Part shown: piece after piece, positions 4,139 through 43,293 of the stretch
How positions within the stretch are numbered: the stretch's first letter is position 1
How the letters are laid out: each line of letters starts with the position of its first letter
From: Chara braunii
Taxonomy: Eukaryota > Plantae > Charophyceae
Reading direction: 5' to 3'
DNA length: 64,000 bases
Assembly (NCBI GenBank): GCA_003427395.1
Contig: BFEA01000020.1
Coordinates: forward strand, 5,553,154 to 5,617,153
Position numbers and translations under genes: made by a program
Notes under the pieces: model-generated
What the model saw: only the letters and a program-made list of their open reading frames with translations
Databases searched by the model: none
Told to the model about the DNA's origin: nothing

Positions 4139-4176
4139 CTGTCTCTTATACACATCTAGATGTGTATAAGAGACAG
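4139..4176. other. Nextera mate-pair junction adapter (assembly artefact)
   Basis: CTGTCTCTTATACACATCT-AGATGTGTATAAGAGACAG, flanked by a duplicated ~65 bp segment. Confidence 0.97.
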
Positions 4177-7190: not shown

Positions 7191-7921
7191 GATCTGCTTC
7201 TCTATTTCGTTTTTTTACACCTGTACAATTTGAATTGCCAGGATTGGATTGGGTCGGTCTCAACTTTCATTGACTTCATGTATACGGGACCCCTCCTGAT
7301 CTGTTCTTCAATTTCATTTGTTTGTTTACACCTGTGTGCTTCGATTTGATAGTTAACTCTTGGTTGATGGGAATCTGACTTCGTCGTCTCTGCTTTCATC
7401 AGAAATTATTTGCTTCCTCCCTAGCTGTGTTTCAATAATCTGAAGGGAAAGCAATCCTTTGGTTTGGAAGTCGATCTCTCCTCCCTGTTCGATTTCGCCA
7501 CGTTGGATAAGGGATTGTAATAATTAGGGTTACACTAGGGAGACTCGTTCTTTGTCAACTTCAGATCCTAATTAAACAACGAATTATCAAGGGTTTGATG
7601 GGATCTTCGATTCAGTTAGACTCTTATACCCTGCTACCCCTCCCCCCCCAGTGTGTATGGTGCAGGACGCCCCAAGTAGATTTAGTCAAGTTGAGCAGGG
7701 CAGAGCTTGATTGCGCATGGTGCGGGGTTAATCCTTCCTTATTTGGGAAGCAATCAATGCCCCTTGCCCGCGCTACATCCATATAGAATAGGGAAACTGT
7801 CTCCATGGGACCAGTGGCTGAGGCTCTTCCAGCCGTAATGGGAAGAGGCGTGGGTTCGCTTTGTATTCAATTGCCTAATTGAGCCTTGGGCACTGGGCCC
7901 CTTGTTTTGGGGGAAAAAAAA

Positions 7922-9377: not shown

Positions 9378-9599
9378 GCCCCTTAATGACGAAAGTTCCC
9401 AGCTCTCATATATCTCCAGTGGTCTACCGCGTCTGTTGATGCTGTTGTTCGCCACAGTGTCTTGAAGACTTCCAGTTGTTCACATCGTTTGCAGCAGGTG
9501 TAGAGGCGGCGGGATGGTTGAGGCTCAGAGGTGGGAGGGGGTCGAGAGGGGGTGGTGGCGAAAGACGGCGGGATGATTGAGGCTCAGGAGACGGGGGGG

Positions 9600-10221
9600 G
9601 GTTCGGGGAGGAGGTGGTGGCGGGGGTAGTGAGTGGGGAGTGGGATGGGTTACTGCGGAGTTGGGGCAGGGGCGATTGTGTGGTGGGGATTCTGAGGGAT
9701 CAACAGAAAGTTGGTCGGTAGGTATGGGACTGCAAAATCATCTAGGGATCTTCTTTGCCAGAATGGTTCATCCGCCCTCCAGTTTTTCCATTGTAAATGG
9801 AGGTCGTCTAGGAGGTCAGAGAAGGCGTGGTGCGGGTCCTGCCAGATCTGGCAGTAGGTGTTGGCATCTCTTTCATTGTGATAGTTCTGTTTCATGGTTT
9901 TCCAGGCATATTGTGTGCGGGATCTGATCTCTTCCTCTATCGCCTGCTGTACTTGCTGCAGACCGTATTGGTGGTCTTTTCTCTCAAAGGAGCATCTAGC
10001 TCTCCAAGCTTGCATGAGAACGTGTAGTCTCATGTATGAGAAGTGGTTAGTGGCAAATGGAGTCCAGTGCCGTAGAAGATGTTGGTTTTTGCCTAGCAAG
10101 ATAAGGCCCAGGTCCCACGGGATATGTATGTTCGTGAGCGAATGGAACGCCGCGTCCCACCACCTCCATATTTGGGCAACCATCGGGCACGCCAACAGGC
10201 AGTGTTCGAGTGTTGCCCTGG
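9600..10221 (-). pseudogene. 3' end of L1-clade LINE ORF2 (second half of zinc-knuckle region)
   Basis: ATLEHCLLACP...IWRWW...WRARC; joins in frame to CTFCGRTTLPAR at 29195 once the insertion is removed. Confidence 0.85.
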
Positions 10222-10478
10222 AAGCTATGTGTCCCCCTAGGCCGTGGCTGCCTCCGACTCGGCCGCGGGCCCGCGGCCGAGTTCCTGCGCGGCCGTGCCA
10301 CGGCCCAGTGGGGGCGCACGCGCGCGGGCGGCGCACGTCGTCCCCTATGTGACTGCGGCAAAAAAAATTAAAATTTTCTTTTTTTTGGGGGGGGGTGTTT
10401 TTTTTTTTGATTGATTCATTGGTTTTTTTGATTGATTGATTGATTGGTAGGGGAGGGGTCCTCCCTCCCCTCCCCCCG

Positions 10479-10479
<1 letters not shown>

Positions 10480-10535
<56 letters not shown>

Positions 10536-12135
10536 AAAAAATAATAATAAAAGTTATAATCTTAGTTAATAATAAATATTTTTTTAATAGTAGTATAAGT
10601 AATAATAAAATAATAAAATAATTGAATAATAAATAATAAAATAATTAAAAATTAAATAACTATATAAGTAATATCAATTAAGTAATAATAGTATAATAAT
10701 AATGATAATAAGTAATCATAATAATAATAATAAAATAAATTAAGTAAAATAATTAAAAATTACTATTAAAAAATAATAATAAAACTTACCACCAACCCGG
10801 ATCCAGCTTTGTGTATCCTGGATATCTTATAAATTAAAGAATACTGTTACATTAAACTTTTAAATAGGGCCTTCACATACCCAGTACTCCCCCAATAAAC
10901 TACTGAATATGATTTCACGATATGGCACTCACCACGCCTCCCACAAAATGGAAACTATATCTTTTTATGCCAAACATACATTGACTGTAACACAGTTATG
11001 GGTCTCCATTGCAATGTATACAATGGCACTGATAATATAACTATACAACCCTCCCACGCAATTAAAAAAACGTTTCACACACGGTACCGCACTCCCAAGC
11101 AAATACACCCGCAACCCACAACACCACCACCCTGAAACGACACAACCGAGTACGCAATGAAAAGACACAGCACACGCGTGCTCGACAGTAAAAGAACAGA
11201 CAAAACACTGCTCCCGCCATAGCAAAAACTCCCCCTTATGAAAACGACAGCCGATAAGACAATACCCCACGGGCCGATACACATACAGACAAAAGAACAA
11301 CTGTACAACACTGACTCCTCGACGGCCATATCCATGCACACACTTACCGGATGCAATTATACCACGACTCACCCAAAATTTCAGCGCAACCCACACCCTG
11401 ATGCTCCGTACCTATCAAACATCACCAAGTGATTACCCCCCCCACCACCACCACTAGGCCCCTCACTTCTTGTTAAAATAACACACGCCACCCTCACCCT
11501 CGCATAACTTTGAATGGCGCAAAACAAGAAGTCGCAACACGACGCTTACAACCCACAAAAACTCGGATACACCACATACACCCCTCATAACTGGGCTTCA
11601 AACTCCGCCAAAATGGATCTCCTGCCCCTACCCCCAACCTACCTTACCTTTGGTATACCCTCCTTATACACCTNAGTTNCCTATCATATACTAATCCCCC
11701 GTAGGTTGCACACCCTCTTTATTATGCATCNTATATTCAAGAGATATNGCTTTTTCCATAANCGCTGGCGTCCCCGTGCACTAGCACACGAGTTCTCGCC
11801 TGCATGACATGCTCCTCTACCNCCTTCACGGCACAGNTGTTCCTCCGGTTCGGAGAGCTGTTCGCCTAGCAGTTCCTNCTCCTGGCGTCGGTGAGAAGTA
11901 CGTCCGTTCACNGGACGCTCAGCTTACGNTGAATAGCGATCTGACGTTTCGCTACGCAAGCGCACACAGTGNTATGGCGGCGACTGATCCTCAAGCTGCA
12001 CCGATCTTGACCTCTCAGGTAAGGATTNATAACCATGGTCTACCTCCTGCACACTCTCCCCCTTCTATCCCGTGCTTCCCTGCTCTCCCGAAGCGACCTT
12101 TTTTCTTTCTTCCCCAATACTGCTAACCGGAGCTN
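10480..12135 (+). repeat. Left pseudo-LTR (shared part)
   Basis: Matches 26431-28029, starting at (CA)n then an AT-rich tract; first ~500 bp differ by SNPs and a ~30 bp indel. Confidence 0.9.
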
Positions 12136-12143
12136 ACACTAAT

Positions 12144-12194
12144 CCCTCTGATGAGCTGCTATAGGTGTTAGGCAGTGAAAAGCGCGCTTAAGGG
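12144..12194 (+). ncRNA. Type I hammerhead ribozyme with palindromic stem III
   Basis: CCCT-CTGATGA-GCTGC(tataggtgttag)GCAGT-GAA-AAGCGCGCTT-A-AGGG: stem I CCCT/AGGG, cores CUGAUGA and GAAA, predicted cleavage after UUA (12190). Confidence 0.85.
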
Positions 12195-12803
12195 CGTGCA
12201 CACCCCCTACGATTGGGATTTGTCCCTCTCCTAACATCTAACCTACTAACACTAATTACTAATTCCACCATGCTCCTTAAAATAACTCCCCCAACTCCTT
12301 TTTTTTTTTTTTTTTCCCTTCACTCCCCGTTTATCTAATGATTTTGGATGTCATTCGAGTCTCCCTGCATAATGTACATGCAGACTAACTACTAATGAGA
12401 TCTTCGTGAGCTCCACCGCCGGTTTCCCACGCCACGTGGGATGACCGTGTTTCGTGCACAAACCCCCCCACACACACACCCGGATCGATTGATCCAGTTG
12501 CTAGGCATGGGGTAGACTCCCCTGCTGACCTGTTGGACATAGCTCAAGCTTACCTTCCCATCCTTACATAATGATACATCCATTTAATTTCTCCCACCCC
12601 TTCCCTGATCCCACATATAATATACATCGCTCCTTTTCACTACGATACATAATGCATACACAACAATTACATGCGCAACCCTGACATACGTAAACTTGTG
12701 CCCATACCATATACAGAAACACTATCATACCTTAAACCCACACCCATAGACCCGCTGCTACCTTGCCCTCTTCTGCCCGCACTCCCCCTTCCCCCCTCCC
12801 CCC

Positions 12804-12913
12804 CACATCTAGATGTGTATAAGAGACAGGGGGGTGGTGGCAAAAGACGGCGGGATGATTGAGGCTCAGGAGACGGGGGGGGGTTCGGGGAGGAGGTGGT
12901 GGCGGGGGTAGTG
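12804..12913. other. Partial Nextera junction adapter plus chimeric copy of ~9548-9631 (artefact)
   Basis: CACATCTAGATGTGTATAAGAGACAG followed by sequence duplicated from 3.3 kb upstream, then Ns. Confidence 0.93.
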
Positions 12914-13149
12914 NNNNNNNNNNNNNNNNNNNNNNNNNTCCTCTCCCCAACCGTTACCCCATATATCGCATGTATTGCACAACCGGTATGCACCATAACC
13001 ATACAAATGCTACACCTATACGTTCGTTATATCGCAATTTCCTTGCATAACCCCCAAACCATTCATCACTAACTATTAACTCGCAGCTAACTCCTAAGCA
13101 CATTCAGTATTCGATGTTAAAGCTTTAAGATTAATCTATGATTTCAACC

Positions 13150-16100
13150 CACAGATCAATTGGGGTTGCCAGAATAATTCTCTGGCGAAAGTATTGCTCA
13201 TGAATTCTCTTTTGTGTCTCGTTTCTCTTAGTTAGAATAGTTGAGATCTTGCGTGTACTCACTACCCTCTGCCAACAAATGGTTGTCTCTTTGGAATTGC
13301 TTCACAAGGATCCATTACACGCGATTGCGCAAAAAGATGATAACAAAAATGCGATCAATACTAGCAACGCCTCTCAATTATTTTGGGTCCTTGAAAGCTA
13401 ATCACACATCAAACTTAACTCATTCCCCTGACTCATAGTAAGAGATGCCCCTGGTGCCTATTGGATTTATACTTTCGCGACTTATATACAACTCTCGCTG
13501 CTTCAGATGGACAGGTAATACTAAAACAAGTAGTACTAATACGCATGCACTTATAAACGGATGAGTTGTTTTATCGGTATTACCAGGATATGTGTGCCAG
13601 CGCTAAACGCAGTTTTTTGTTTTCGACAATACTGCGGGGCGTCGACTTCTGCAGGATAAAATTTAATCGCTTTCCCTTTTTGTTGTTTGATTAGTAGTCT
13701 TGGACATTGCGCACGATATCAATAAAACACGTAATTCCACGATTTATAGTGTGGTTCCTTGATTTTCCTCCCCCCGCCACCACTCCTTCATATATACACA
13801 GCATCGCCTATTATTCATACGATATTAGATCGGAAGCATTAATACATCACTTATTAGAAACATAGTAAACACCCGTTTGTCCTACATACACGATAATTAA
13901 GTCCCTTTAGCATATGCAGCCACACTATAATACCTTAAACCCATGATCTGCAGATGCGTACTCCTTCTCCTTTCCGCCCCCTCCCCCTCACCTCCCCCAC
14001 TACATTCTACATCGAGCCCCTAATGAAATATACTACATACCGATCTGGAAAGGTACGATGAGGTTTTATACTTTGGGCTTGTGATTATCCAGGCTATTCA
14101 CGATTAGCATATACGACCCATGACAATTAGTACCCCGATCTGGCTCATCTTTAGCAAATTACATACAGCGAATTCCTCTACACTCTCTTAACAAGTATAA
14201 ACCATTCTTATTAATCCTAACTGGCTTTCGGCGTTTTTAATTTCCCTTTACACGTGTCTTTGCGATTAAACAATCTCCTTACAATTACCCCCCACTGCAA
14301 AAAAATGCTCATGTCCGAAATTTCACCTACCACGTCATTCAAGCACCATGTGGAACTGCCCTCGCACTTATCCCGTGTGTGAAGGGTCCAAATAATGAAA
14401 CCATTACCCCCGACCTACATTGTTCAAACAGATAGATGTAATATGCTTTCCTCTAAATATCTAATCATCGAAAATTAATCTGTGTTTGCTTGATTGTCAC
14501 CATGCAGGATATATTTCTTGACGAATAATGTTGAGTGACAAATACTTACTGCCTGCAATCTAAACTGTTCTCCGCTCATAAATAGACGTTGCTTGCTGCT
14601 CAAACTCTCCCGCCCCGTCTTCCATGAACATCTACCTAATATGCTTCTGATCTCACGGATGAACTCTATCACGCTGCCTTTCCCCAACTCCCTAAGCAAA
14701 CTCGCTTCCCCATTATACGCGTCTCTGTCTTAGACAATCCTTGAAAGTAAAAGTCACATGTTCTCGCTAATTGATGATTTCCGCAGGATTTGGTCTACGT
14801 ATCAAGATAAATAGGTGAGTATTTTTTGGAGCTTAACCAGTGATTGCCTTGACGATGGCTCGCTACCCATAAAGATTGTCAACTATTTTTGTAGCTTGTG
14901 TTGCGGTACGATGAAAAATGTTGTCCGAGGCATCTCTCTTAAAATCCGTGGACTCTCCCGCCCCGCTCTCCTGGACATTTGTCTTATATAAAGATGACCG
15001 GGATAATGCTTACTGCTCTTTTTAGACTATTGCCTCTCTTATAGAAAAACACTACTTCACCGTACCTTCATATACGGCATGGCGTTTGACAACTGCTGAA
15101 TGAAAAATTCATAATTCTCTCCTTTTGAATATGGTTATACCAAGACTCTACTAAGTTTAAAAGCAGATGACGATAAGAGTAGCTTTGCACATCAATTTCT
15201 CTGGGCCTCCTCTTCCGACCCACTATTTATGTAAATCTTTTTTGTACGACTCCGATGCACATACGACTTTCGCAACTCAGCCATTACAGGTTATTCTTGG
15301 AGGGAATCGTCACCCCTTAAAACTAACCATTCAAATACATATTGCCGGTACTTAGCAGGATAAGTTATGTCGTATCATGCTTGCTTCTTATGAATAACCT
15401 AAATCTCGGCCCCCATCCCTACTCACTGGTAGAGCTGGTTTGCTTAATAAGCTTAGCCCCTTTCCATAACTCACGAAAACTTCCATAATACAAGCACTGC
15501 TTCGAAAACTTTCGATAATGTGAATACTGGCGTAGAACGCATAATAGATCAAGATGCATATAATGACGTCTTGCACCACTTTCAAAACATAGCTACTTCA
15601 CCAATTCCTAGATCGGCACGTGTACTTATAAATATCATGGTGGTTTACGCGACAACGTCATGCCCTCGTGCGATAATACGTTTCGATTGCCTCCGGAAAA
15701 TATTCCATACTTACACTCCATAACTCAAGCCTAGCTAAAACTTTATAAGACCCCTGTTGGTTACGCAATAGACATAATACATGTAAACAAACTACACCCT
15801 CGTCTTGCACACAAATCCCGACGTTAGATGGAAACGGATCTGGTCTACTAACACCACCTTACTCAGACGATTTACGACTAAAAGTCTACTTAAAAGCATG
15901 GCCATGACATCTCGACCATAGGAACACACGAGTGGTAATAGTCAGATATTAGGATACATGAGCATTGTTGGCAGTGCAGTATTACTATCTGATCATCGTG
16001 TCTGGTTAAAGTTGACCTCTGTGTGTGGCATTACGGTAACTCCTGATTGCCCTCGGACGATGATAAGCTCAAGTCCCGAGAACCAAAAAATTGTGGACTA

Positions 16101-18400
16101 ACTACTTGCTAGTTATTAAAACATCATGACACATAGAAAACCCCTGGCTAAAAATACTAGGGATATGGATAGGCTAATCTATAGATTAGGTAGGATGTAC
16201 GAAGGAGAATATTAGGTCGACACCTATTTTTTCATAATTAATCCCTGTATATATAGTACAAAATTGTATGTACCAGTAATTCTGCTTGGTTCTAGACAAG
16301 ATACCGGACATACTAATTTAATAATACCCATTGTAGTATATTACGACACAGCCTCAAAACAAAGGAATATTCATAATGACCAGTTTATTAGACACAGAGG
16401 AGAATTTTTTTTATCAGAAAAAGATAAATCATACTTAATACGAAAGTAAACTATACCTAGTGCGCATATCGATCATCCAATCCCAAGACAAGACGACGAT
16501 GGTCTGATACTCGCCCCCTCCTGAATTGCTTATGATTAATATTGGTGATAGACACCTGCCTGTATGACCTGCCAAAACCATGCACCTATTATTTAAACAT
16601 CACTGTGATGGACATTACACGTTTGGAACCTCACTTTACACATAACACGACTACCCTGACTAGGACATAGTCGCTTAACGTAGACTGTGTATCAGCCATT
16701 CAGTTTTTTGAAATATATGCTAGTTTAGCAAAACATGTTCTGTATCCGTGCCTACAGCTTCCCTGATGATGAGAATAAGTCAATATCCTCTACTGATACA
16801 ATCTTGATACTTCCCGTTTCAAGGTAGGGAAAAACCTTGACGGGTTTACCCGAAGTTAGAACGTCATCAACACATTAAGTTATACAACTTTTTCCAGAAC
16901 ACGTTTGTAAATTCCCTTTTATGATATAAGTTATGGCTACTTTAAAACTTTCCATATTGCTCGCTCCGCATAAAAATGAAGGCGCATATCATGCCCTACA
17001 TACACAAACCTCCCCGAAAAAATTCTTTCCTGTTGCCAACTCTCACTGTTGCGTACAGGCAACGAACACATTAGATAAACACTCACACATATCCTGACGC
17101 CATTGTGTACGATTGGTAGGCTAACAGGGTACAATGACCTCCCTATATGGCCATAAGACCTTTTTTCATACTTATCAGAAAAACCAATCTTACGCTTGTA
17201 GCCATACAAATTTTTAGAAAATGCGCACCATAGACAAAAACAGTTATGTATTTAAAACCAAAATTCACCCGACTCTACAACTAAAATAGTTGACACTCTA
17301 CCATACACACCATGACAAGATCCACAATAAATGTCGATCACACATTCGAATCTTTTATCCAGATGTCCTTATTCGATAGCACACACAACTCAATCAGCGT
17401 CCCTAACCGTGTTACTAGCACGAACTGGTTAAATCACACGTGCGGCCGGCCTGAATCTTTCGTACCAATCAACCACGCTATGCACTTAGTCCCCTGGTTC
17501 CCTTAAAGATCCACCGGAAAACTCGGGACTATCTATAAACGGCTACCTGGCGAAACTTTGCCATACTCAAATGGTTACCACGGATAGTTATCCCCAATGC
17601 GCAATACACCTCGCATACCCCTACGTTCTTGTAAGGGGGGTTCCATTATTGCCTCCCACTCCACGAAATCCACCTGACGACCATCATGCTCCTGTAACAG
17701 ATCGCTTGTCACGAGATCAACCATTTCTGCCACCACATCTACTCCACCACCCGGAACTGAATCTGGTATATCTTTGTGCACCTTTCTTACAAATACGGTA
17801 CCCTCACACAAATTTTCCGCATCATATCCCAACCCCACGCTCAACTCTAAAGCCAGTGCCTCATTCGTCATTACACGATAATGACGCACCGCGGATTCAG
17901 TAACCCGGAGACTGAATCGATAATCCAAACCCTTTTTGTCTCCCCGACGATGGCGTAGCTCATGCACCATTATTGCTCTACCACGAACATCCCCCACACA
18001 CGTGGTTACGATATCCATACTGCCGTGACAGACTCTCCTTCCCCTTCCTCTCGCCCTTGTTCCTGCCTTCTTCGTTGTTCTTCCCCCAACTGCTTTCTGG
18101 TATTCCCTTCTTCCTCCCCCTCTCCCTCTCGCTCTCGCCTCCCCGACCACTCTTATCTCGCCGTCTTTCAAATACCCAAGATAATCCTCCGTTAATTCTT
18201 CCTAAGTGGCCAAAAAACCATCGTTACCATGAGTGGTTACTGTTACCACCTCCATACCTGACCCATGAGCCCACAACTGATGGCGCAGATCCACCCCGCT
18301 GCTCACGACTAAACTACAGTCTTCCCTCCTTATATACTGATCAGCCACCTGGATCGATAAAACAATAACGCACATGGATCGATAAAACAACACATACCAT
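13150..18400 (-). pseudogene. Possible decayed multi-exon gene of unknown function inside the PLE
   Basis: 198-aa ORF (17575-18171), 90-aa and 74-aa ORFs and protein-like frames broken by stops, some ending at GT donor-like sites; no family recognised. Confidence 0.3.
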
Positions 18401-18721
18401 CCCCCTTGCAAATACTGAGATGAGCGAGTTACCGCCCTTCGCGAATTTTTTGTCTTCAAACACCCTAGGGCATGACAAACCTTACAAACCCCTTATTACC
18501 CCCATATGACGCACACATATGGGATCTATAAACGATTAATATATGGAACCCCTGTCGTCAACTACGTACAAACCCTATTCATTATCTGATCCAAAATACC
18601 TCCACCCCACCCGACCTACTTTGTTAATTAAAATAAAAAACAATAAATTAATAAAAAATAATTGATAAATATCAAATCAACTAAGAAATAAATTTGTATA
18701 AAATACTAAAATGTTTGAATT

Positions 18722-18752
<31 letters not shown>

Positions 18753-19618
18753 AAAAAAATAAAAATAAAAAATAAAAAATAAAAAATAGAATAAAAAAAA
18801 TTAATACAATTTATTTTATAAAAATATATAAATAAATTTATAAAAATAATAAAAACTTTTAAATACAAACTAGACAAAAAAAAAAAAAAAAATTTATAAA
18901 AAGGGTTTTCCTCTTCACTACTGACTGATTCCCCATGCATCCACCTTCAGTCTATACAGCCCCCACGAGTCTAGCCAATTTTTTGAAAAAACTATAACTG
19001 TTAAACAGTAGAAACATGAATGCTACGATCTCTTACATACATGATCTGCACCCTGACCTGCAATGATAACCCGGACGTGACGATCCAAGACATACCGCAC
19101 CCCTAATGCCCTCTACGTCGTCCCTGTCTATGACTTACTGGGCAAACCAGATCGACACACAGAGTACAAACCTTAAAAGTATAATAAAAATTTAAAAAAT
19201 AAAAAATAAAATTAAGAATAAAGAAAAAATAATAAATAGTACTATAGGAAGCCCACTTTCACAGAGACGCACATCTGCCAGATTAAATAAGCTACCCAAT
19301 GACACATTCGCAACATTATACTATGCCCACTGCGAATCACAACCATATTGCTATGCCACCTAAAAATAACTCTACAGGCTAAAACAATAACCAATTAATC
19401 GTTGTTGATACCTTGCATCCCTCCTACGTTTCAGACCACTTACTCCTAAGTCATACAAATAATGCATTCCTACCCTGTATAGACAACAAAAAAACATACG
19501 CATACAATGCCCAACCTACAGTTGCCTCTACCATCGCACACAGAGATTCCTAAAACCCCCCTGCTATCTTTCCCTCAAAAGAACACCCGCTATATCCCTG
19601 CACTAACTCTCGTCGCGC

Positions 19619-22430
19619 GTGTGTAACGTTGTGCAGGACCAGGACAGTATTCAGATGGGATGGCACCCGGAGCTGGTCACGGCCATTAGACCGTTCTCCG
19701 CCCTTAAGCCACCCAACGTACACTGTCAGATAGCCATGCTGGCTATCCCTGCTGATGTCCTGCTACGTGTACACGTAGCCTCGAACGGACATGCTCCCTT
19801 CCTAATAGAGAATCTATCCTTCAGTGATTGGGCGGCCATGGTCGCGGTAATGCAAACTAGGCCCCATGAACTTGAGGATAAGATCAAGGAGCTTGCCTCC
19901 AACATTGCAGAAGTCTGTAGAAGGTCTGCCATTGAGAACAGAGAGCTAAGCCTCATCATCGCTAAGGCTGAGAAGATCATACTCGAGCTCCACGGATACG
20001 ACACCGCGCATCTGGACTGCGCAGGTCAGATTTCCATAAACGAGAGCTCTGAGACCTTCACAGACATCTACATCAATAGTATTGCACGCACTCCTGCAGA
20101 GTTAGATTACTTCAAGAAGAAGAAAGCCTTGAGAAGGGACAATGCCCACATGAAGATCTCCAGCACGTCTGGCGAGGCCAACCACAAGCTCGGCAAGAAC
20201 AGCTCCTTCTTACCTCTCGCATCGAGCACATGGACAGAAAAAGCGGTACAATGGGTCCACAACAGGCTATGGAAGTTGAACTCCTTCAATTATACAGCAC
20301 CGATTAGTGTGGATGCCTACATGGCGCTAGCTGGGCTGAATGATGCAGACATAGACAACTGTCGAACTGCTGCCAAGAACGCGACCATCCACTTTCCTGC
20401 TGGACGAGCCGGCTATGATGCGGACTTCCTGCCAATTGCCAAACTGGAGGAAGGCAAGTGTCCTAAAAAGTCGCTGCTTCACCAGAAGGGTATTCCCAGG
20501 TTTCCCACAGACCTACTTGAACTCAAGAAGCTGTGGAATGCTGGGAGACCGTTTCTCAAGTGCCCATGCATTAGCTGTGAGTTGAACTTCACATGGCTGG
20601 ATCATATGATCTGGTACATCATCGGTAACCTCGACAAGTTGGACCCGAATGCACCATCAGACAAGATCCGCATGCTCGAATTCCAAGCACTGCTGCGCAC
20701 TACATGGAGAAGACCAATTCTGGCCCAGATCACGTTCCTGTTCATGCGTGAATACATGATGAAGATCGTTCATCTCATCACGCAGAACAAGAACATCTCC
20801 GCTGAAGAAATCCTCGCTTTTGAAGATTTCCATAACGTACCATTTGTACGGAAGTTCACTGCAGCACTCCTCCCTAACGCTGAAGGACTTCTCACGCCAA
20901 GCACAACCAGAAGAAATGGTGCCATAGACTTCGAGGACAACTCCTTGCGCAGATGCCGCCAGATCAGACTTGGTACTCCTGCCTCTGGCTTACCTGCAAT
21001 GCACTCATCTGCTACACATACACCACCCGCCTCTACCAATGCGCACGCACAGTCACCACTACTAGGCACTGCTACTGCGAATGCACATGTTCTCCAAACC
21101 ACTCCACCGGCCTCAGATCCTATAATCCACAATGCTGCTTCCATTTCAGCACCTTAGCCACTGAGACAACCTGGCCCGATCACGCAACCACCTCAAGCTG
21201 CAAACTCCCGCCCCTCTCACGACACGCCCGGTATGCACACTCACAATAGTGGTCACACACTACGCAACACCCAAAATGCACAGCAGAGCCACATAAACCC
21301 ACCACACATCAGCCACCCTTCAATACGCCCCAACACACAGGCCGGCCCACTGCCCATTCCCACCATCGTTCCCACTACTCCGTGGCACGCTATTGCCCCC
21401 CCTGTTCCTCATGTGCAAGTAAACACCTTCACCTTCGCAGCGGCTCAGCAAGCCGCCAGGAACAGTATCTCCCCCAACCCGAACACGTCACGTACAAGCC
21501 CTTTCCTCTCAATGCAAAGTACTGCCACTGCAAACATCTTTACTGCACCTGACCTAATCCCCACCACCACAGCCCCCACACCTCTCGGCAACACCAACAC
21601 CACTGCGCAACCGGCTCCGCACCTCACCACAGAAGCAGAAAAGCTTGCACAGAGAACGGAGCAGCTACTGTGAATTGCAATGAGCCCGCTGCCTGCTGAG
21701 AAAAGAAGGAATACCCGCAGAGGAAACAAGACCACCAGAATACAAACAGGGTTGGGTAATGGTCAGAAGCAAAAGCGGCCAAGGCGTAGCAATCTGCAAT
21801 ATGACAACCGACAACCATATATGGATGATATCTTCCATGTACAAGCACAAAGACAGAGCACCTCTGCTTCGCACACGCTTTCCCTGTTGGCTGCTCAGCA
21901 AGCCATCACTGCCAACCCTCATGCTATCGCTGGTACGGTCCCAGCTATAGCGGACCAAATGCCTCAGTCTGCACGCGCATGGATCCCAACCACTGAGGAA
22001 CTACTACAACAATGGCCACAACGACTCGGTAATGAGAACATGCCACGATAGCCGCCTGCACAGACGAACCCGGAGGTCATCCCAGTAAGCAGCAACGAGA
22101 TTATTGATGGTGGAAGACAACAACTCCCAATCAGCATCAGCTCACCATCTCCAGAAACGCCGCTACGACCTACGAATGTTGTCGAGGCTCTGAGACACAA
22201 CTATGGAGCCAGCAGTGCGGATTCATCGCTCCTCCGAACATCCAGCAACCAAACAGCACTCGACACCGAAGCTACCTCTTCAGAAGAATCATGGAAAAGA
22301 GTCTGGCGCAGACTCAGCCCGGACTACATGAATGGCACTACGAGCATCGCTAGAAGCTGAGATGCACCAGACTGACATAGACGGACTGTCTCAGATGATA
22401 ACCAAACTCTTAGACCTACTAACTGCATCC
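19619..22430 (+). pseudogene. PLE accessory ORF (~900 codons): globular N-terminal part with predicted coiled coil and CxCxxC, then P/T/Q/A-rich tail
   Basis: ORFs 19619-21157, 21233-21673 and 21680-22051 share one frame, separated by single stops (TAG, TGA, TAG); probable acceptor TTGTGCAG near 19637. Confidence 0.65.
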
Positions 22431-24135
22431 CCTTACCCCGTTTCACCCCTGACTGTCTGGATCCCTTGCTCTATTTTGCCCTACCCCCCCGCACCTGCTA
22501 GTGCTCCCCCTCCCCCATCCTTCCATCTCTGTTTCCAGCGCCTTTTTCCCCCCCTCCCTTCCTCTATCACCCCCCTCCTCTACCCAAGACCTCCCCCCTC
22601 CAATCTCTGTCCCCTCCTCCAATGCACACAGTCGCCACGTCTCGCTCTCCCCCTCCCTTCATACACCTCTCCCAATTTCCTATGCTCCCAACCCCGCTTT
22701 CTCCCTTCTTCACCACCACCCTCTACTCAACCCAAAGACTCCCCCTAATGCTCGCCCTCACCTGCCCTCAGTTCCCCTATCTCGAACCCTCTCGCTTTCC
22801 CTCTCTCCCGCTCCCCCGCTACCATCGGCCACCCCTCTCCCTCTCACACCGTCAACCCCTCCTATTGCTCCCATTATTCGTTGTATGCTCACCACTGGAT
22901 TTAGTACCGCATTAGCTGTAGCATCACGTAGCTGATGTGAAATCTGAGCCATAGGATACACCCTCACCTTGGCATTCCTATTTCAGCACTACGAGTAGCC
23001 CGGCAGGCAGATTATAAATAAAGATGCTATCTACCCTAATAACAGGTTGAGCAGCTTTCACTGAAAAGGCGGTGGCCATCACTTGGTGATCTGTAACATC
23101 GCAAAAATAAATCTGAAATGATAAGCAGTACTCTGCTTTCAAAAGATACTGGTACCTACTCCCAGTTGCTACAAGCAGATACTCGGCGCGGTTTTCATAG
23201 CTTTGTATTTAACGTTGTAGCTCATGACAGTGGCAAATGCCTGATGACTTCTACTAAGTCTTGAGTTGGAATGATACAGGCAATCTCGCCTGGTACCTTG
23301 GAAGTTGCATGAAATTTTGTTATCGTTCTTACGTATGCTAATATAAGACTGTTTCGCAGTTTTCAGAAAGTTAAATTTTGTTCCTTCTTTTCTTGATTTT
23401 AAATTTTCTATTTCTTTCTTTTTCTTTATTAATTTATTATTATTTTTTATTTTTTATTTTTTTATTTTTTTATATATTTATTAAATATTTTTTATTTTTT
23501 ATTTTTATTATTTTTTTGATTTATTATTTTCTTTTCTCATGAAAGTACCCCATACTTCCAGGCGTGCCAGTATAATATATGCTGACCTTGCATCAACACG
23601 TGTCCCCCATGCGGTTTTGTTGTATCTAGGGATACCATAAAATAAACTTCTACCCTCCCTTTCGTACCCGCTAAAAGATCAGGGACAACTAAAAACTATA
23701 TATTTTTTTAAAAAAACCTATACGCGCGTTCCCTACCTGAGAATGGTGGGTAACCATTGACTCAGCAATATTAAACACTTACCCTGGGAGAACAAGATCT
23801 TGAGTCCTGTTGCCAAAAACCACCATGACACCGCACACTGATGTTCTCTGCCAAATACTGTAAAACGCCACAAAATTTTTTGTCAACATAACCACCGCCT
23901 ACCCTTTACTTACCTATTGCCCAACCCAGAAACAACGAAGCAGGTTCGTCCCTATCTAGCAACCAGGACATACAACACACTCCACCTATGACCCGCCAAC
24001 ACATACCTGGCATACCGTAACATACAAGGCCAAAAAGCAGCACACCCACCGAACCCCCAACAAGTATAATATACACTACAAATATACGCACAACCAGCAA
24101 CGACTTACTCCCTCAAGTTGAACAACAAATAGCCA

Positions 24136-26302
24136 ATGGCTATCAGTATGACTTTAACCACATTTGGCACGCTGTGTGTGCAGGTACATCGGCTACAGAC
24201 CATGGAAGATGGAAGATTTGGCTGGAAAGCCCCCAAAGAAGATGACAAGATTATTATCGCATGCCACTACACCAACCGTTTAATGGACAGAATCAAATTC
24301 AAAAAAATATTCGATAAAATTCTGAAAAAATACAATTTGAACGCACTCCCGCTCCTGAACAAATGCACGTTCTCCTGGACCTATAATGATCAGATTGCTA
24401 AAGCCCTATATAAACCCGTTGCGGTCTTCCGCGACTTCACGATCACAGAATGGATGAACCAAACACAAGAGATTTGTTTTTGCCAGCATCAAAGGTATGC
24501 TGCATTCACTACCCCCCTACCGCCTGAACTAATCCAACCAGAGAACAATGCACACGTCCTCACGTTAAATCTTAACATTATTTCCAACAAGGAATTGCAG
24601 AGACTAACCCGGTGCGGACTAAACCATATCCCCGCGCAGACCCCCAACCAAAATGAGACCTTGGAGGCTGCACACCAGGTTTGGGAAAACCTCTTAAGCA
24701 TGCTGGAACGGAATGGTGCACCTATGCCAAACGAGCACTTACCACTGGCTTGCAAGGAGTTCCTTAGCATCATACTACGAATGACTTCCAACATGCGGCA
24801 CCACAGAGAAACTAACCTTAACGACCATGCAATCAAGCACGAAATAGACTTCCTCACTAGGCACTTCTACATTTCCGGTGCTGATAAAGCACCTAATACT
24901 CCTGTTGTTATCTGCATTAACTTGGTTAGACAGTTAGCCTTGCGAAGACTCACCAGCCCCGACTTTGAACCCTGCCTATGCACTACCAATGAGTTGATCA
25001 CTCATCTTGAACTAGAACTGACTTCTAGGTTCCCGGACATCCCAATTGGCAAGAAAACATTACCCTACCTCTTTGCCACCTACAAGAAACACAAAAACTC
25101 GTTCCGATGGTTAACTAACGCCTCAGACATCATATCATCCCCTCTCGCTGACCTCACCGCTGAGATCCTGAAAACACTCATCAAAGTAGTGAAAACACAT
25201 TGCGGAGGATTAACACTGCAAACCTTCGCAAAAACCGGACTAAGGGTCCCATACTGGTGGCCCATAGATTCTACAGCAGACTATGTCTATAACCTACCAT
25301 CACAAGCAATGTCAGTCTTCTCTGCAGACATAACTAGATGTTATGAGACCATTCCTACTGACAGTAGCCCAGACGGCCTCCCCAACGCACTCCAGTTTTT
25401 TACAAAAATAGCATTCCAACAGGCCAAGGCATCCTTTGGCAATGGCATACAACTTGCCTTCAAATTCTATTACAAAGCAGACCTGCTTACCCCCACCTGC
25501 GACTGGTTTCACCACCCCCCCCTCCGGATACCTAACGCTTACTGGTGAAATGGTCAATACCATCAGCAACTGGCTCATCACTAACGCATATACCTCGCTA
25601 GGTAACGTAGTCTGGAAACAGACGCTAGGCATCCCTATGGGTGTCAATTGCTCGCCTATGTGGTGTAATATCTACTTCTTCAAATACGAATATAAATTCA
25701 TGAAGAAGATGACTCATAAAGCCAATAAACACCTGCTTCCCCTATTTCAGCATGTGTTCCGATACTTCGATGACCTCCATGTCATCAACAACCCAATAAT
25801 ACAAGAATTCCTCAACCCCGAAATAACAAGCACAAGAAGCAAGTTCTTCCTATACCCCCTGCACCTCATCACCATTAACGAACAGACCTCAGAAAAAACG
25901 CAAGACCACAACAGGAATATCGGAATCAAAACTAACTTCCTTAACGCAACAATCGAAATCACTGACATAATCACCGGACAATACAAAACCTACAAATATG
26001 ACAAAAGACGGGATTTGGACTTCACAATCACCCGATTCATACAAGCACACTCCAACAGACCAACACAGCAATCACTTAATCTGGTCATTCCTCAAATCAT
26101 CACGATAATGCTTATCGAAACCAACGCACAACATGCGGCCTCCGAAATCAAACACATTATTAACTGCCTGGTGCATAACGGCTTCCCAAAGCACATACTT
26201 TTTGGCATCATTAGAAGGATACTACAACACCCAGAAGAGTACCAACCCTTCCGATGTTGCCCACAAACTGTCCTGCACCAGCTTCAAGACTATCCTATAT
26301 AA
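24136..26302 (+). CDS. Penelope-like reverse transcriptase (CxC linker plus RT), one +1 frameshift
   Basis: CFC...HVLTLNLNIISN..L..L...G linker; ADKAPN; LPYLFATYKKHK..FRWL; SADITRCYETIP; QTLGIPMGVNCSP; RYFDDL..NNP; YDKRRDLDFTI..F...SNRP; frames overlap at C8 run 25515-25522. Confidence 0.88.
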
Positions 26303-26430
26303 ATAACACCAGAACAAAAATATAAACATGTGTGTGTGAAGGAGGACCTACCCCGGGTGGGGTAGATCCTTAATCCAATGCAAAAAAGACCTACCCCACC
26401 CGCTCCTCCATCACGAGGGAACGGGGAGGG

Positions 26431-28029
26431 ACACACACACACACACACACATAAAAAAATAATAATAAAAGTTATAATCTTAGTTAATAATAAATCTTTT
26501 TTTAATAATAATATAAGTAATAATAAAATAATAAAATAATTCAATAATAAATAATAAAATAATTAAAAATTAAATAACTATGTAAGTAATATCAATAAAA
26601 TAATAATAGTATAATAAAAATGATAATAAGTAATAATAATAATAATAATAATAAAATAAATTAAGTAAAATAATTAAAAATTACTATTAAAAAATAATAA
26701 TAGAACTTACCACCAACATCTTATAAATTAAAGAATACTGTTACACTAAATTTTTAAATAGGGCCTTCGCATACCCAGTACTCCCCCAATAAACTACTCA
26801 ATACGATTTCACGATATGGCACTCACCACGCCTCCCACAAAATGGAAACTATATCTTTTTATGCCAAACATACATTGACTGTAACACAGTTATGGGTCTC
26901 CATTGCAATGTATACAATGGGACTGATAATATAACTATACAACCCTCCCATGCAATTAAAAAAAACGTTTCACACACGGTACCGCACTCCCAAGCAAATA
27001 CACCCGCAACCCACAACACCACCACCCTGAAACGACACAACCGAGTACGCAATGAAAAGACACAGCACACGCGTGCTCGACAGTAAAAGAACAGACAAAA
27101 CACTGCTCCCGCCATAGCAAAAACTCCCCCTTATGAAAACGACAGCCGATAAGACAATACCCCACGGGCCGATACACATACAGACAAAAGAACAACTGTA
27201 CAACACTGACTCCTCGACGGCCATATCCATGCACACACTTACCGGATGCAATTATACCACGACTCACCCAAAATTTCAGCGCAACCCACACCCTGATGCT
27301 CCGTACCTATCAAACATCACCAAGTGATTACCCCCCCCACCACCACCACTAGGCCCCTCACTTCTTGTTAAAATAACACACGCCACCCTCACCCTCGCAT
27401 AACTTTGAATGGCGCAAAACAAGAAGTCGCAACACGACGCTTACAACCCACAAAAACTCGGATACACCACATACACCCCTCATAACTGGGCTTCAAACTC
27501 CGCCAAAATGGATCTCCTGCCCCTACCCCCAACCTACCTTACCTTTGGTATACCCTCCTTATACACCTNAGTTNCCTATCATATACTAATCCCCCGTAGG
27601 TTGCACACCCTCTTTATTATGCATCNTATATTCAAGAGATATNGCTTTTTCCATAANCGCTGGCGTCCCCGTGCACTAGCACACGAGTTCTCGCCTGCAT
27701 GACATGCTCCTCTACCNCCTTCACGGCACAGNTGTTCCTCCGGTTCGGAGAGCTGTTCGCCTAGCAGTTCCTNCTCCTGGCGTCGGTGAGAAGTACGTCC
27801 GTTCACNGGACGCTCAGCTTACGNTGAATAGCGATCTGACGTTTCGCTACGCAAGCGCACACAGTGNTATGGCGGCGACTGATCCTCAAGCTGCACCGAT
27901 CTTGACCTCTCAGGTAAGGATTNATAACCATGGTCTACCTCCTGCACACTCTCCCCCTTCTATCCCGTGCTTCCCTGCTCTCCCGAAGCGACCTTTTTTC
28001 TTTCTTCCCCAATACTGCTAACCGGAGCT
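26431..28029 (+). repeat. Right pseudo-LTR (truncated by N gap just before the hammerhead position)
   Basis: Matches 10480-12135. Confidence 0.9.
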
Positions 28030-28473
28030 NNNNNNNNNNNNNNNNNNNNNNNNNNNNNNNNNNNNNNNNNNNNNNNNNNNNNNNNNNNNNNNNNNNNNNN
28101 NNNNNNNNNNNNNNNNNNNNNNNNNNNNNNNNNNNNNNNNNNNNNNNNNNNNNNNNNNNNNNNNNNNNNNNNNNNNNNNNNNNNNNNNNNNNNNNNNNNN
28201 NNNNNNNNNNNNNNNNNNNNNNNNNNNNNNNNNNNNNNNNNNNNNNNNNNNNNNNNNNNNNNNNNNNNNNNNNNNNNNNNNNNNNNNNNNNNNNNNNNNN
28301 NNNNNNNNNNNNNNNNNNNNNNNNNNNNNNNNNNNNNNNNNNNNNNNNNNNNNNNNNNNNNNNNNNNNNNNNNNNNNNNNNNNNNNNNNNNNNNNNNNNN
28401 NNNNNNNNNNNNNNNNNNNNNNNNNNNNNNNNNNNNNNNNNNNNNNNNNNNNNNNNNNNNNNNNNNNNNNNNN

Positions 28474-28770
<297 letters not shown>

Positions 28771-42750: not shown

Positions 42751-43114
42751 AAACTATTGAACACTTTTTTTTTTTGGGGGGGGGAACATGCTCCAATCTA
42801 TTTGTGAGGAGCAGCACGTGCTGGGAACCGGGCCCAGCGTTCCATTCAAGATCATATTCCCCGCACCCAAGGCCCTACCCCCTCTGTCTCTGCTACATTG
42901 ACCTCCCTTCTCGACCGCCGGCCAGGGATGTTCGAGAGCAGGCTGAATAAGTAGAGCGGAACGAGAAACAGGCACAGCCAGCATATGACTTCTCAAATTC
43001 AGGATCCCAGCCCTAGTACCTAGGAAGGGAAACGCTCGGGCAGAATCTGCATACTCAATTTCGATTTCAAACTCATGTACATTATCATCATCATCACTTA
43101 CACAGCATTGTAAC

Positions 43115-43293
43115 CTGTCTCTTATACACATCTAGATGTGTATAAGAGACAGCCCTAGTACCTAGGAAGGGAAACGCTCGGGCAGAATCTGCATACTCAA
43201 TTTCGATTTCAAACTCATGTACATTATCATCATCATCACTTACACAGCATTGTAACTGTCTCTTATACACATCTAGATGTGTATAAGAGACAG
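43115..43293. other. Two Nextera junction adapters (43115-43152, 43256-43293) with an artefactual ~100 bp duplication
   Basis: Exact 38-bp junction adapter twice. Confidence 0.97.

What the first reader, a model, noticed from the sequence alone, without database searches (positions are those of the whole stretch)
10480..28473. Giant (~16 kb unit) multi-ORF Penelope-like element: Naiad/Chlamys-type RT, hammerhead ribozyme, no visible endonuclease
Seen: 1.6-kb direct repeats ~15.9 kb apart, an RT ending ~130 bp before the right repeat, a ~900-codon co-oriented ORF, a possible antisense gene, and microsatellite flanks. Established (from memory): a CxC linker before a C-terminal RT, pseudo-LTRs and microsatellite bias characterise Naiad/Chlamys PLEs, which have an N-terminal GIY-YIG and were reported to lack canonical hammerheads. 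Giant multi-ORF hammerhead-bearing PLEs (Terminons) use Athena RTs and are telomere-associated in bdelloid rotifers. Inference: this may be an undescribed Terminon-like lineage built independently on a Chlamys-type RT, inserted interstitially in a green-lineage genome.
Basis: partly seen in the sequence, partly recalled or inferred. Interest (0 to 1): 0.9.

Follow-up and report, generated by a model that had tools for sequence, protein, structure and literature searches.

The report
Giant Penelope-like retrotransposon of Chara
This is a decayed copy of a multi-copy, unusually large (14-16 kb) retrotransposon family of the alga Chara braunii. It belongs to an already published endonuclease-less branch of Penelope-like elements, but carries features I did not find described: a long non-coding leader, a conserved antisense gene and two separate forward genes.

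Summary
Direct repeats lie at 10513-12134 and 26431-28029. There is a divergent RT (24202-26302), a 917-codon forward ORF (19607-22357), a conserved antisense ORF (17575-18171), a hammerhead-like motif (12144-12194) and (CA)n boundaries.

The genome is Chara braunii. Eight other loci keep the same order of parts. Unit length, where measurable, is 13.75-15.9 kb. All three ORFs show saturated synonymous sites but dN/dS of 0.07-0.4. So this is one real element family, not a chance juxtaposition.

The RT has the CxC motif, DKA, and a ~90-aa insertion between motifs A and B. Its closest non-Chara relatives are Selaginella RTs, one family of which sits beside 28S rDNA. The big forward ORF is homologous to the gene upstream of those Selaginella RTs.

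That places the element in the EN-less, hammerhead-bearing "PLE-X" group of Chlamys elements, reported from Chara and Selaginella by Craig et al. 2021. The lineage is therefore not undescribed, and it is not Terminon-related (no Athena-type features, no telomere).

What looks new: double the reported size, a 5-6 kb non-coding leader, the antisense gene, two separate ORFs each preceded by an identical acceptor-like motif, and a (C)n(CA)n 3' terminus.

This copy is broken, and the assembly here carries artefacts. No read evidence could be obtained.

The parts
10480..10533 (.). (CA)27 microsatellite at the left boundary. The repeat proper starts inside it at 10513.
   Evidence: Left boundaries of L001, L003, L005 and L007 also lie in (CA)n.
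10513..12479 (+). Left pseudo-LTR: the 3'-terminal ~2 kb of an upstream partial unit. It runs (CA)n, AT-rich low complexity (10534-10790), ~1.3 kb, hammerhead, ~270 nt, 3' terminus.
   Evidence: Repeat with 26431-28029. Homologous pLTR pairs in L001 (2.0 kb, 94.7%), L005 (2.4 kb, 91.8%) and L007.
12144..12194 (+). Type I hammerhead-like motif. Stem I is 12144-12147 with 12191-12194. Core CUGAUGA is 12148-12154. Stem II is 12155-12159 with 12172-12176. GAA is 12177-12179. The palindromic stem III is 12180-12189. The predicted cut is after A12190.
   Evidence: Alignment A1 of 10 copies: 91.7% of cells paired against 25-49% when slid; stem II position 3 is U-G, C-G or U-A. Not called by Rfam. MFE favours an alternative hairpin.
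12457..12479 (+). 3'-terminal motif of the unit: CACAAA, (C)7, (CA)5. The full-length body follows directly.
   Evidence: The same motif ends the unit at 8 junctions in W, L001, L002, L005 (three times), L007 and L008.
12480..12581 (+). Conserved 5' block of the body (CCGGATCG..GATCC..GGGGTAGACTCCCC).
   Evidence: Conserved in W, L001, L003, L004, L005 and L006; conservation stops after it.
12811..12938 (.). Assembly artefact: Nextera mosaic-end adapter (12811-12829), a copy of 9548-9631 (12830-12913), then a 25-N gap.
12939..17574 (+). Non-coding, fast-evolving leader. It may be a 5' intron.
   Evidence: No ORF of 80 aa or more except one of 90 aa. Not alignable between copies. Length is 5.8-7.9 kb from hammerhead to ORF-X in 6 loci. 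All 6 share C>G skew of -0.22 to -0.29, against about 0 in the flanks.
17575..18171 (-). Antisense ORF (198 aa; conserved part 17575-18024). Function unknown.
   Evidence: Conserved in L001, L003, L006 and L008. pN/pS is 0.19-0.39 with only the terminal stops, while the other five frames hold 7-24 stops. No Pfam, PDB or fold match.
19630..19657 (+). TGTGCAG, 18 nt, then the ATG of ORF-X (ATG at 19655). A CTAAC lies about 30 nt upstream. Putative branch point and 3' splice site.
19607..22360 (+). ORF-X, about 900 codons. It has a conserved N-domain with KCxCxxC..W.DH, a variable Pro/Thr-rich linker and a conserved C-end. This copy has 3 nonsense codons.
   Evidence: At least 18 paralogues in C. 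braunii, with an intact 808-aa copy in L001. dN/dS is 0.07-0.24. The stop-codon position is conserved. W's stops match CAG/AGA/CAA in L003. Homology to the Selaginella PLE-X upstream gene.
22361..24176 (+). Non-conserved spacer between ORF-X and the RT, with a T-rich tract at 23396-23530.
24177..24204 (+). A second TGTGCAG, 18 nt, then the ATG of the RT ORF in ACCATGG context (ATG at 24202).
24202..26302 (+). RT ORF, about 700 codons: CxC at 24475, GLNHIP, DKA at 24883, KKHK..FRWLTNA, ADITRCYETIP, a ~90-aa A-B insertion, GIPMG, YFDD. It is broken by one extra C in a C8 run near 25515-25522.
26326..26430 (+). Conserved block with an 11-bp hairpin (26344-26369) between the RT stop and the internal (CA)n.
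26431..28029 (+). Right pseudo-LTR, cut by the gap 28030-28474 before its hammerhead and 3' end.
28475..28556 (.). (TC)n(CA)n microsatellite right of the gap: the right boundary.

Best explanation
The stretch 10480 to about 28474 is one insertion, a partial unit followed by a full unit. It belongs to a multi-copy family of endonuclease-less Penelope-like retrotransposons of Chara braunii, within the Chlamys 'PLE-X' group.

Shown:
- The family unit is 13.75-15.9 kb.
- It always carries, in this order: a ~2-kb terminal segment with a hammerhead-like motif and a (C)n(CA)n 3' end; a 5-6 kb non-coding leader; an antisense ORF in 5 of the 9 loci; ORF-X with a CxCxxC zinc-ribbon-like core; a spacer; and a CxC/IFD-type RT.
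- All three ORFs evolved under purifying selection.
- Insertions begin and end in (CA)n.

Inferred mechanism:
- The element is transcribed from the upstream pseudo-LTR, and the hammerhead trims the RNA.
- ORF-X and RT are translated from their own AUGs. These probably lie on alternatively spliced mRNAs, because each AUG sits 18 nt after a conserved TGTGCAG with an upstream CTAAC.
- The genomic RNA stays unspliced, as in other PLEs.
- Having no nuclease of its own, the element starts reverse transcription where its (C)n(CA)n tract pairs with a free (TG)n/(G)n DNA 3' end in a microsatellite. This resembles the way Athena and Coprina use telomeric overhangs.
- cDNA synthesis runs past one unit length, on a read-through or circularised template. 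The 5' junction forms by microhomology at the element's second, internal (CA)n, which produces the pseudo-LTR.

This particular copy is dead: three nonsense codons in ORF-X and one frameshift in the RT.
For: - Genome identity: all protein hits are C. braunii.
- Family and synteny: L001-L008 keep the order and spacing. Unit lengths are 13751 (L001), 15769 (L005) and about 15900 (W).
- Selection: pS is 0.45-0.9 against pN 0.10-0.38 for ORF-X, RT and the antisense ORF.
- Leader: shared composition in 6 copies.
- RT diagnostics named by Craig et al.: nearly invariant CxC, DKA, K.HK..R.LTN, and A-B spacing of ~90 aa here and 84-99 aa in relatives.
- Relatives: 279 hits, with other Chara families at 31-37% identity. 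Next come Selaginella P0038 and the P0049 cluster. The P0049-type units are 5.2-kb tandems beside 28S rRNA, as published for PLE-X.
- ORF-X homology to the Selaginella upstream gene: tblastn E 1.5e-14 and 1.5e-7; hhalign E 5.7e-5. ORF-X-like domains also precede the RT in many Chara gene models and in L012.
- Termini.
- Acceptor-like motif: 15 instances in 9 loci, against 0.045 expected per window.
- Literature: PMC8557442.
Against: - Transcription, splicing, hammerhead cleavage and antisense expression are all untested.
- No RT phylogeny against named Naiad, Chlamys, Athena, Penelope or TERT references could be built, because none was available by reference.
- The hammerhead is not recognised by Rfam models, and the monomer's MFE fold is a competing hairpin.
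- Absence of an endonuclease rests on negative searches. Pfam also finds no GIY-YIG in any of the 20 relatives scanned, and I had no EN+ Chlamys reference to show that the model can detect that EN at all. ORF-X or the antisense ORF could hide a nuclease.
- No intact RT was seen in any of the 9 copies. I could not see the paper's supplementary consensus sequences, so this family may already be catalogued.
Confidence: 0.85

Rival explanations
1. ORF-X and RT form one spliced gene, as proposed for PLE-X1_sTam. The element would then be a single-ORF PLE-X with a long intron, not a multi-ORF element.
For: - The published PLE-X model joins the N-terminal extension to the RT through an intron.
- Many Chara gene models fuse an ORF-X-like domain to an RT.
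- In L012 the two lie in the same frame, about 280 nt apart.
Against: - In this family ORF-X ends at a stop codon whose position is conserved in 7 copies while its identity varies (TGA, TAA, TAG). Conservation ends there.
- The RT has its own conserved ATG in ACCATGG context.
- That ATG follows the same TGTGCAG-plus-18-nt motif that precedes the ORF-X ATG.
- The P0025 fusion spans 38 kb and joins different elements.
Confidence: 0.2
2. The family is non-autonomous for integration. A GIY-YIG endonuclease from the EN+ Chlamys families of the same genome nicks (CA)n/(C)n targets in trans. The terminal (C)n(CA)n then simply reflects that shared target.
For: - EN+ Chlamys families are abundant in C. 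braunii and target (CA)n and (C)n.
- No intact RT was seen in 9 copies.
Against: - The (C)n(CA)n tract is part of the element at internal unit junctions, not only at flanks.
- Selaginella PLE-X relatives integrate at a precise rDNA site without a known EN.
- The RT and ORF-X are under purifying selection.
Confidence: 0.3
3. The 16-kb unit is an artefact. Either two short PLE copies were juxtaposed with unrelated DNA between them, or the locus is a scaffolding error.
For: - Adapter chimera at 12811-12913 and two gaps.
- Repeat copies are identical including their Ns over 1.07 kb.
- The only DNA runs holding the stretch come from one study.
Against: - The same order and similar spacing recur on eight other scaffolds at 57-79% protein identity.
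- Leader composition is element-like in all copies.
- The adapter junction itself links 9548 to about 12810 on one ~3.3-kb DNA fragment.
Confidence: 0.04

Closest known systems
PLE-X families (EN-less Chlamys subgroup) of Selaginella and Chara braunii, Craig et al. 2021 (PMC8557442)
   Same: - CxC motif, IFD-length insertion and DK motif in the RT.
- No GIY-YIG.
- Hammerhead motif and pseudo-LTR tandems.
- An upstream domain with CxCX1-8C, homologous to ORF-X.
- The Selaginella RTs are the closest non-Chara relatives found, and one family sits beside 28S rDNA.
   Different: - The body is 11.7-13.9 kb, against the reported 3.3-8.2 kb.
- ORF-X is 800-900 aa with its own conserved stop, 1.2-2.7 kb upstream of an RT that has its own ATG.
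- A 5-6 kb non-coding leader.
- A conserved antisense ORF.
- (CA)n targets rather than rDNA.
- Identity to the 7.1-kb Chara family in L012 is only 27% (ORF-X) and 30-50% (RT).
Chlamys-2_cBra (Chara; 3' hammerhead plus an upstream gag-like zf-CCHC ORF)
   Same: Same genome, two forward ORFs, a 3' hammerhead.
   Different: That family is described among the EN+ Chlamys types, and its upstream ORF has a CCHC knuckle. Here no EN and no zf-CCHC hit were found. The upstream ORF has a CxCxxC..H core with only a weak GRF-like zinc-ribbon score.
Terminons / Athena (bdelloid rotifers)
   Same: EN-less RT, hammerhead near the 3' end, a large multi-ORF unit, and a 3' simple-repeat tract that could pair with a DNA 3' end.
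   Different: - The RT is Chlamys-type, not Athena-type.
- There are no telomeric repeats and the locations are interstitial (contig positions).
- It has three ORFs and 14-16 kb, rather than the many ORFs and much larger size I recall for Terminons (from memory; the paper read here says only 'giant').
Retrozymes / non-LTR retrozymes (hammerhead-bounded circular-RNA retroelements)
   Same: A hammerhead in a repeated terminal segment. Greater-than-unit-length tandem insertions are compatible with rolling-circle copying (abstract of 10.64898/2026.07.22.740005).
   Different: This element is large and, as a family, coding (RT under selection). No circular RNA has been shown.

Membership tests
Penelope-like elements (PLE) | RT with PLE N-terminal motifs (GxKF/Y-type motif, DKG/DKA) and K.HK..RP/RW motif | tested here: met
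   GLNHIP, DKA and YKKHKNSFRWLTNA are aligned and nearly invariant in 20 relatives. The Pfam RVT_1 hit is only weak.
Penelope-like elements (PLE) | Partial-tandem insertion giving pseudo-LTRs | tested here: met
   W; L001, L005, L007; a triple arrangement in L005.
Penelope-like elements (PLE) | Hammerhead ribozyme in the pseudo-LTR | tested here: inconclusive
   The core and three stems are conserved in 10 copies. There is no Rfam hit, no compensatory double change, and the MFE prefers another fold. Cleavage is untested.
Penelope-like elements (PLE) | RT groups with PLEs (sister to TERT) in a phylogeny | not tested
   No named Penelope, Athena, Naiad or TERT sequences were available by reference. 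The PDB sequence search gave no TERT hit.
Naiad/Chlamys clade | CxC motif upstream of the RT core | tested here: met
   C92 and C94 of the RT ORF (nt 24475) are nearly invariant.
Naiad/Chlamys clade | Insertion-in-fingers domain between RT3(A) and RT4(B) | tested here: met
   About 90 aa lie between ETIP and GIPMG here, and 84-99 aa in 11 relatives. That ordinary RTs have roughly 30-45 aa is from general knowledge.
Naiad/Chlamys clade | N-terminal GIY-YIG endonuclease | tested here: not met
   Only ~91 aa precede the CxC. There is no Pfam GIY-YIG in any ORF tested and no GIY..YIG pattern in 150 relatives. These are negative evidence only.
Naiad/Chlamys clade | Insertion bias for (CA)n / (C)n | tested here: met
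PLE-X (EN-less Chlamys subgroup) | CxC present, EN absent, hammerhead present | tested here: met
   See the rows above. The hammerhead is supported at motif level only.
PLE-X (EN-less Chlamys subgroup) | Upstream/N-terminal extension with a conserved CxCX1-8C motif | tested here: met
   ORF-X has an invariant KCxCxxCE.N..W.DH. It is homologous to the Selaginella extension or upstream gene.
PLE-X (EN-less Chlamys subgroup) | Extension joined to the RT by an intron into one protein | tested here: inconclusive
   A conserved stop ends ORF-X and the RT has its own conserved ATG. There are no RNA data.
PLE-X (EN-less Chlamys subgroup) | Size within the reported Chlamys range (3.3-8.2 kb without pLTR) | tested here: not met
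   11.7 kb (L001), 13.3 kb (L005) and 13.9 kb (W).
Terminons | Athena-type RT and telomere association with reverse-complement telomeric repeats | tested here: not met
   The RT carries the CxC and IFD markers that the paper gives for Naiad/Chlamys, and its closest relatives are Chara and Selaginella PLEs. No (TTTAGGG)3 in the window. Copies lie inside 0.7-4.5 Mb scaffolds.

The most novel reading that the evidence does not exclude
A Chlamys/PLE-X lineage has independently become a complex retroelement with three features.
(1) A giant 5' intron houses an antisense gene.
(2) Two forward genes are expressed through alternative 3' splice sites with an identical TGTGCAG-plus-18-nt-AUG design.
(3) Integration needs no nuclease: the terminal (C)n(CA)n pairs with free (TG)n ends in interstitial microsatellites. 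This would extend the telomere-attachment trick of Athena and Coprina to the whole genome, and would explain how PLE-X spreads without an endonuclease.
Probability: 0.3. Interest if true: 0.7.

Novelty: new variant of a known kind. Interest (0 to 1): 0.5.

Why it matters
Craig et al. left open how EN-less PLE-X elements integrate genome-wide. This family offers a concrete, testable answer. Every unit ends in (C)n(CA)n, every insertion starts in (CA)n, and a second internal (CA)n marks the pseudo-LTR start. It also shows that Penelope-like elements outside rotifers can grow into large multi-gene units, with an antisense gene under selection and what looks like retrovirus-style alternative splicing. 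Practically, at least 18 'hypothetical protein' genes of the C. braunii annotation are ORF-X copies, and several long gene models are chimeras built across such elements.

Tried and rejected
- Rfam at gathering and at E<=10 on 19 kb and on 161 nt: no hammerhead family.
- Alternative genetic code for the in-frame stops: rejected. The stops are a mix of TAG and TGA, and are sense codons in L003.
- Metalloprotease reading of the antisense ORF (HELRH, weak DUF6782): rejected, because the motif is not conserved.
- Antisense ORF as first exon of a DUF659 gene (L008 gene model): rejected. The DUF659 part lies in GC-rich foreign DNA.
- P0025 as a natural ORF-X-RT fusion: rejected. The model spans 38 kb and three elements.
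- AlphaFold models of the ORF-X N-domain (pLDDT 41) and the antisense protein (pLDDT 50) are too poor. Foldseek against PDB gave nothing at E<=0.001.
- ESM Atlas searches were uninformative.
- PDB profile searches for RT, ORF-X and the antisense ORF found nothing useful.
- The word-index protein search with the RT C-half found nothing.
- Continuity across gap 12914-12938 by comparison with L003: no alignable sequence.
- A common 5' splice donor in the conserved 5' block: none convincing.
- Selaginella locus L009 is not in rDNA; L010 is.
- RT tree against named clades: not attempted, for lack of reference sequences.

Full report
**What is there**

The window comes from Chara braunii. Every close protein hit is a CBR_g protein of assembly GCA_003427395.1.

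Self-comparison confirms direct repeats at 10513-12134 and 26431-28029, 96.9% identical. The right copy is cut by the gap at 28030. Between them lie:
- a 917-codon forward frame, 19607-22357, with three in-frame stops;
- two overlapping forward ORFs, 24136-25548 and 25436-26302, with RT motifs;
- an antisense ORF, 17575-18171.

The whole 10.5-28 kb stretch has a strong C>G skew that the flanks lack.

**Assembly**

Positions 12811-12829 are the Nextera mosaic-end adapter. They are followed by an 84-nt copy of 9548-9631 and then the 25-N gap. This is a mate-pair junction built into the contig end.
- It means real sequence stops near 12810.
- Incidentally, it shows that 9548 and about 12810 lay on one ~3.3-kb fragment.
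- Continuity across the gap cannot be shown by sequence. The gap lies in non-coding leader.

The right gap removes the last ~350 nt expected for the right repeat.

From 11064 to 12134 the two repeat copies are identical, even in the positions of 12 single Ns. That part is probably one consensus placed twice, so repeat identity should not be used to date the insertion.

I kept those letters out of all later searches. The only indexed holders are four DNA runs of one study, probably the source sample.

**One element, not a juxtaposition**

ORF-X has at least 18 paralogues in C. braunii at 59-83% identity. I fetched eight such loci (L001-L008).
- All eight keep ORF-X followed, 1.2-2.7 kb later, by the RT.
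- All five with enough upstream sequence have the hammerhead block 5.8-7.9 kb upstream of ORF-X.
- Four also have the antisense ORF about 1.6-2 kb upstream of ORF-X.
- Unit lengths are 13,751 (L001), 15,769 (L005) and about 15,900 (window).

Between copies, synonymous sites are saturated (pS 0.45-0.9) while pN is 0.10-0.38. That gives dN/dS of 0.07-0.24 for ORF-X and RT, and 0.11-0.12 for the antisense ORF.

A six-frame control shows the minus frame is the coding one. It has the lowest pN/pS and only the terminal stops, against 7-24 stops in the other frames.

Saturation explains why the leader and spacers do not align. Their length and C>G skew are nevertheless shared by six copies, so they are part of the element.

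**The copy in the window is dead**
- The three ORF-X stops correspond to CAG, AGA and CAA in L003.
- The RT is split by one extra C in a C8 run near 25515-25522. The two halves are in one frame in L001, L002 and L003.
- The other copies carry their own defects. One ORF-X (L001, 808 aa) is intact. No intact RT was seen.

**Termini**

The unit's 3' end is a conserved motif ending in ACACAA(C)7-16(CA)n, about 230-320 nt after the hammerhead. It is seen at eight junctions, and in the window at 12457-12479.
- At internal junctions the body (CCGGATCG...) follows it directly.
- At outer junctions microsatellite flank follows.

The upstream partial unit starts, in the window and in L001, L005 (twice) and L007, inside a (CA)n. 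That (CA)n corresponds to a second, internal (CA)n located ~130 nt after the RT stop. Just before the internal (CA)n lies a conserved ~100-nt block with an 11-bp hairpin.

**Hammerhead**

Ten copies conserve CUGAUGA, a 5-bp stem II, GAAA, a palindromic AAGCGCGCUU stem III, UA, and a 4-bp stem I (type I topology).
- 91.7% of cells pair, against 25-49% when the partner columns are slid.
- One stem II pair is U-G, C-G or U-A.

Against it:
- no Rfam model reports it, even on 161 nt at E<=10;
- there are no double compensatory changes;
- the monomer's MFE fold uses a competing GCGCGCU/GGCGUGC hairpin.

I treat it as a probable, minimal PLE-type hammerhead that may act as a dimer. That PLE hammerheads dimerise through a palindromic stem III is from my own knowledge. 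Catalysis is untested.

**What family**

An exhaustive phmmer search with the RT N-half found 279 relatives.
- The best are other Chara families at only 31-37% identity.
- Next come Selaginella moellendorffii proteins and unnamed metagenome proteins of 650-780 aa.

The alignment shows the markers that Craig et al. 2021 give for Naiad/Chlamys: a nearly invariant CxC, DKA, and a long A-B insertion (~90 aa). No GIY-YIG was found, and only ~91 aa precede the CxC.

The Selaginella 662-aa RT family forms 5.2-kb tandem units next to 28S rRNA. This matches the published rDNA-specific PLE-X.

The gene upstream of those RTs, the N-terminal extension of P0038, and the N-terminal parts of many Chara RT gene models are all homologous to the ORF-X core around KCxCxxC..W.DH. 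That core is the published 'CxCX1-8C N-terminal extension'.

A 7.1-kb Chara family (L012) has the ORF-X-like domain and the RT in one frame, plus a different hammerhead. It fits the published size range.

The paper states that PLE-X families with canonical hammerheads, CxC and no EN occur genome-wide in C. braunii. The lineage is therefore known.

**What I did not find described**
- A body of 11.7-13.9 kb, against 3.3-8.2 kb.
- The long leader.
- The antisense ORF.
- The split into two ORFs. ORF-X ends at a positionally conserved stop.
- Both ORF-X and RT start at a conserved ATG exactly 18 nt after TGTGCAG, with CTAAC/CTAAT about 30 nt further upstream. There are 15 instances in 9 loci, against 0.045 expected per window. 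This looks like two alternative 3' splice sites.

I could not read the paper's supplementary consensus files. Earlier notes of this scan on other pieces of this genome also report hammerhead retroelements in (TA)n/(CA)n and link them to the published Chara PLEs. I did not test those.

**Mechanism**

- Shown: the architecture, selection on the three ORFs, the termini and the microsatellite junctions.
- Inferred: transcription from the upstream pseudo-LTR; hammerhead trimming; alternative splicing to express ORF-X and RT while unspliced RNA is the template; priming by pairing of (C)n(CA)n with a (TG)n/(G)n DNA end; more-than-unit-length cDNA; and 5' joining at the internal (CA)n.
- Rivals: an endonuclease supplied in trans by EN+ Chlamys families; and a spliced ORF-X-RT fusion.
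- The functions of ORF-X and the antisense protein remain unknown. ORF-X scores only weakly and sub-threshold against a GRF-like zinc ribbon.

**Verdict**

This is a real, well-defined element and a member of the published PLE-X group. It is an unusually large three-ORF variant. Interest is moderate.

Noticed in passing
window 4158-4176, 43134-43152, 43275-43293 (and 12811-12829): The Nextera transposase mosaic-end adapter (19 nt) is built into the assembly at four places in this window. The pair near 43.1-43.3 kb sits in a 99% tandem duplicate (43008-43152 and 43150-43293). These are probably mate-pair junction artefacts.
   Followed up: partly
window 44158-44265 (+): U6 spliceosomal snRNA gene (Rfam RF00026, 67 bits, E 8e-15).
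   Followed up: no
window 28552-28688; L003 102-310: A long (AATC)n/(GATT)n palindromic microsatellite hairpin lies right of the element. (GATT)n also lies left of the (CA)n boundary, both here (10397-10448) and at the related copy L003. This may be a preferred compound target or a 'tail'.
   Followed up: no
window 11674-12135 and 27569-27923: Twelve single Ns fall at exactly matching positions in the two repeat copies, which are otherwise 100% identical there. This suggests one consensus placed twice, with Ns at sites that vary among family copies.
   Followed up: partly
window 26326-26430; L001 15765-15878; L002 9712-9826; L005 16462-16572; L007 17752-17860: A conserved ~100-nt block with an 11-bp GGACCTACCCC/GGGGTAGGTCC hairpin lies between the RT stop and the internal (CA)n. 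It is single-copy per unit and its role is unknown.
   Followed up: partly
L006 11130-34168: A ~23-kb insertion with 3-4.6 kb terminal repeats (probably an LTR retrotransposon) splits ORF-X of that copy. The annotated gene P0017 spans it.
   Followed up: no
L008 (BFEA01000443.1) 1-58233: Two annotated gene models are chimeras. P0025 joins ORF-X of one element to the RT of another 38 kb away. A 1262-aa DUF659 model starts with the antisense ORF exon.
   Followed up: partly
L012 7242-15632: A different Chara PLE family with a 7.1-kb tandem unit. Its ORF-X-like domain and RT lie in one frame, and a distinct hammerhead-like motif occurs at 7549-7599 and 14647-14697.
   Followed up: partly
window 33626-36749: Near-identical segments (33706-34478 with 35977-36749, and smaller pieces) surround two large gaps. 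This is probably a collapsed or duplicated repeat in the scaffold.
   Followed up: no
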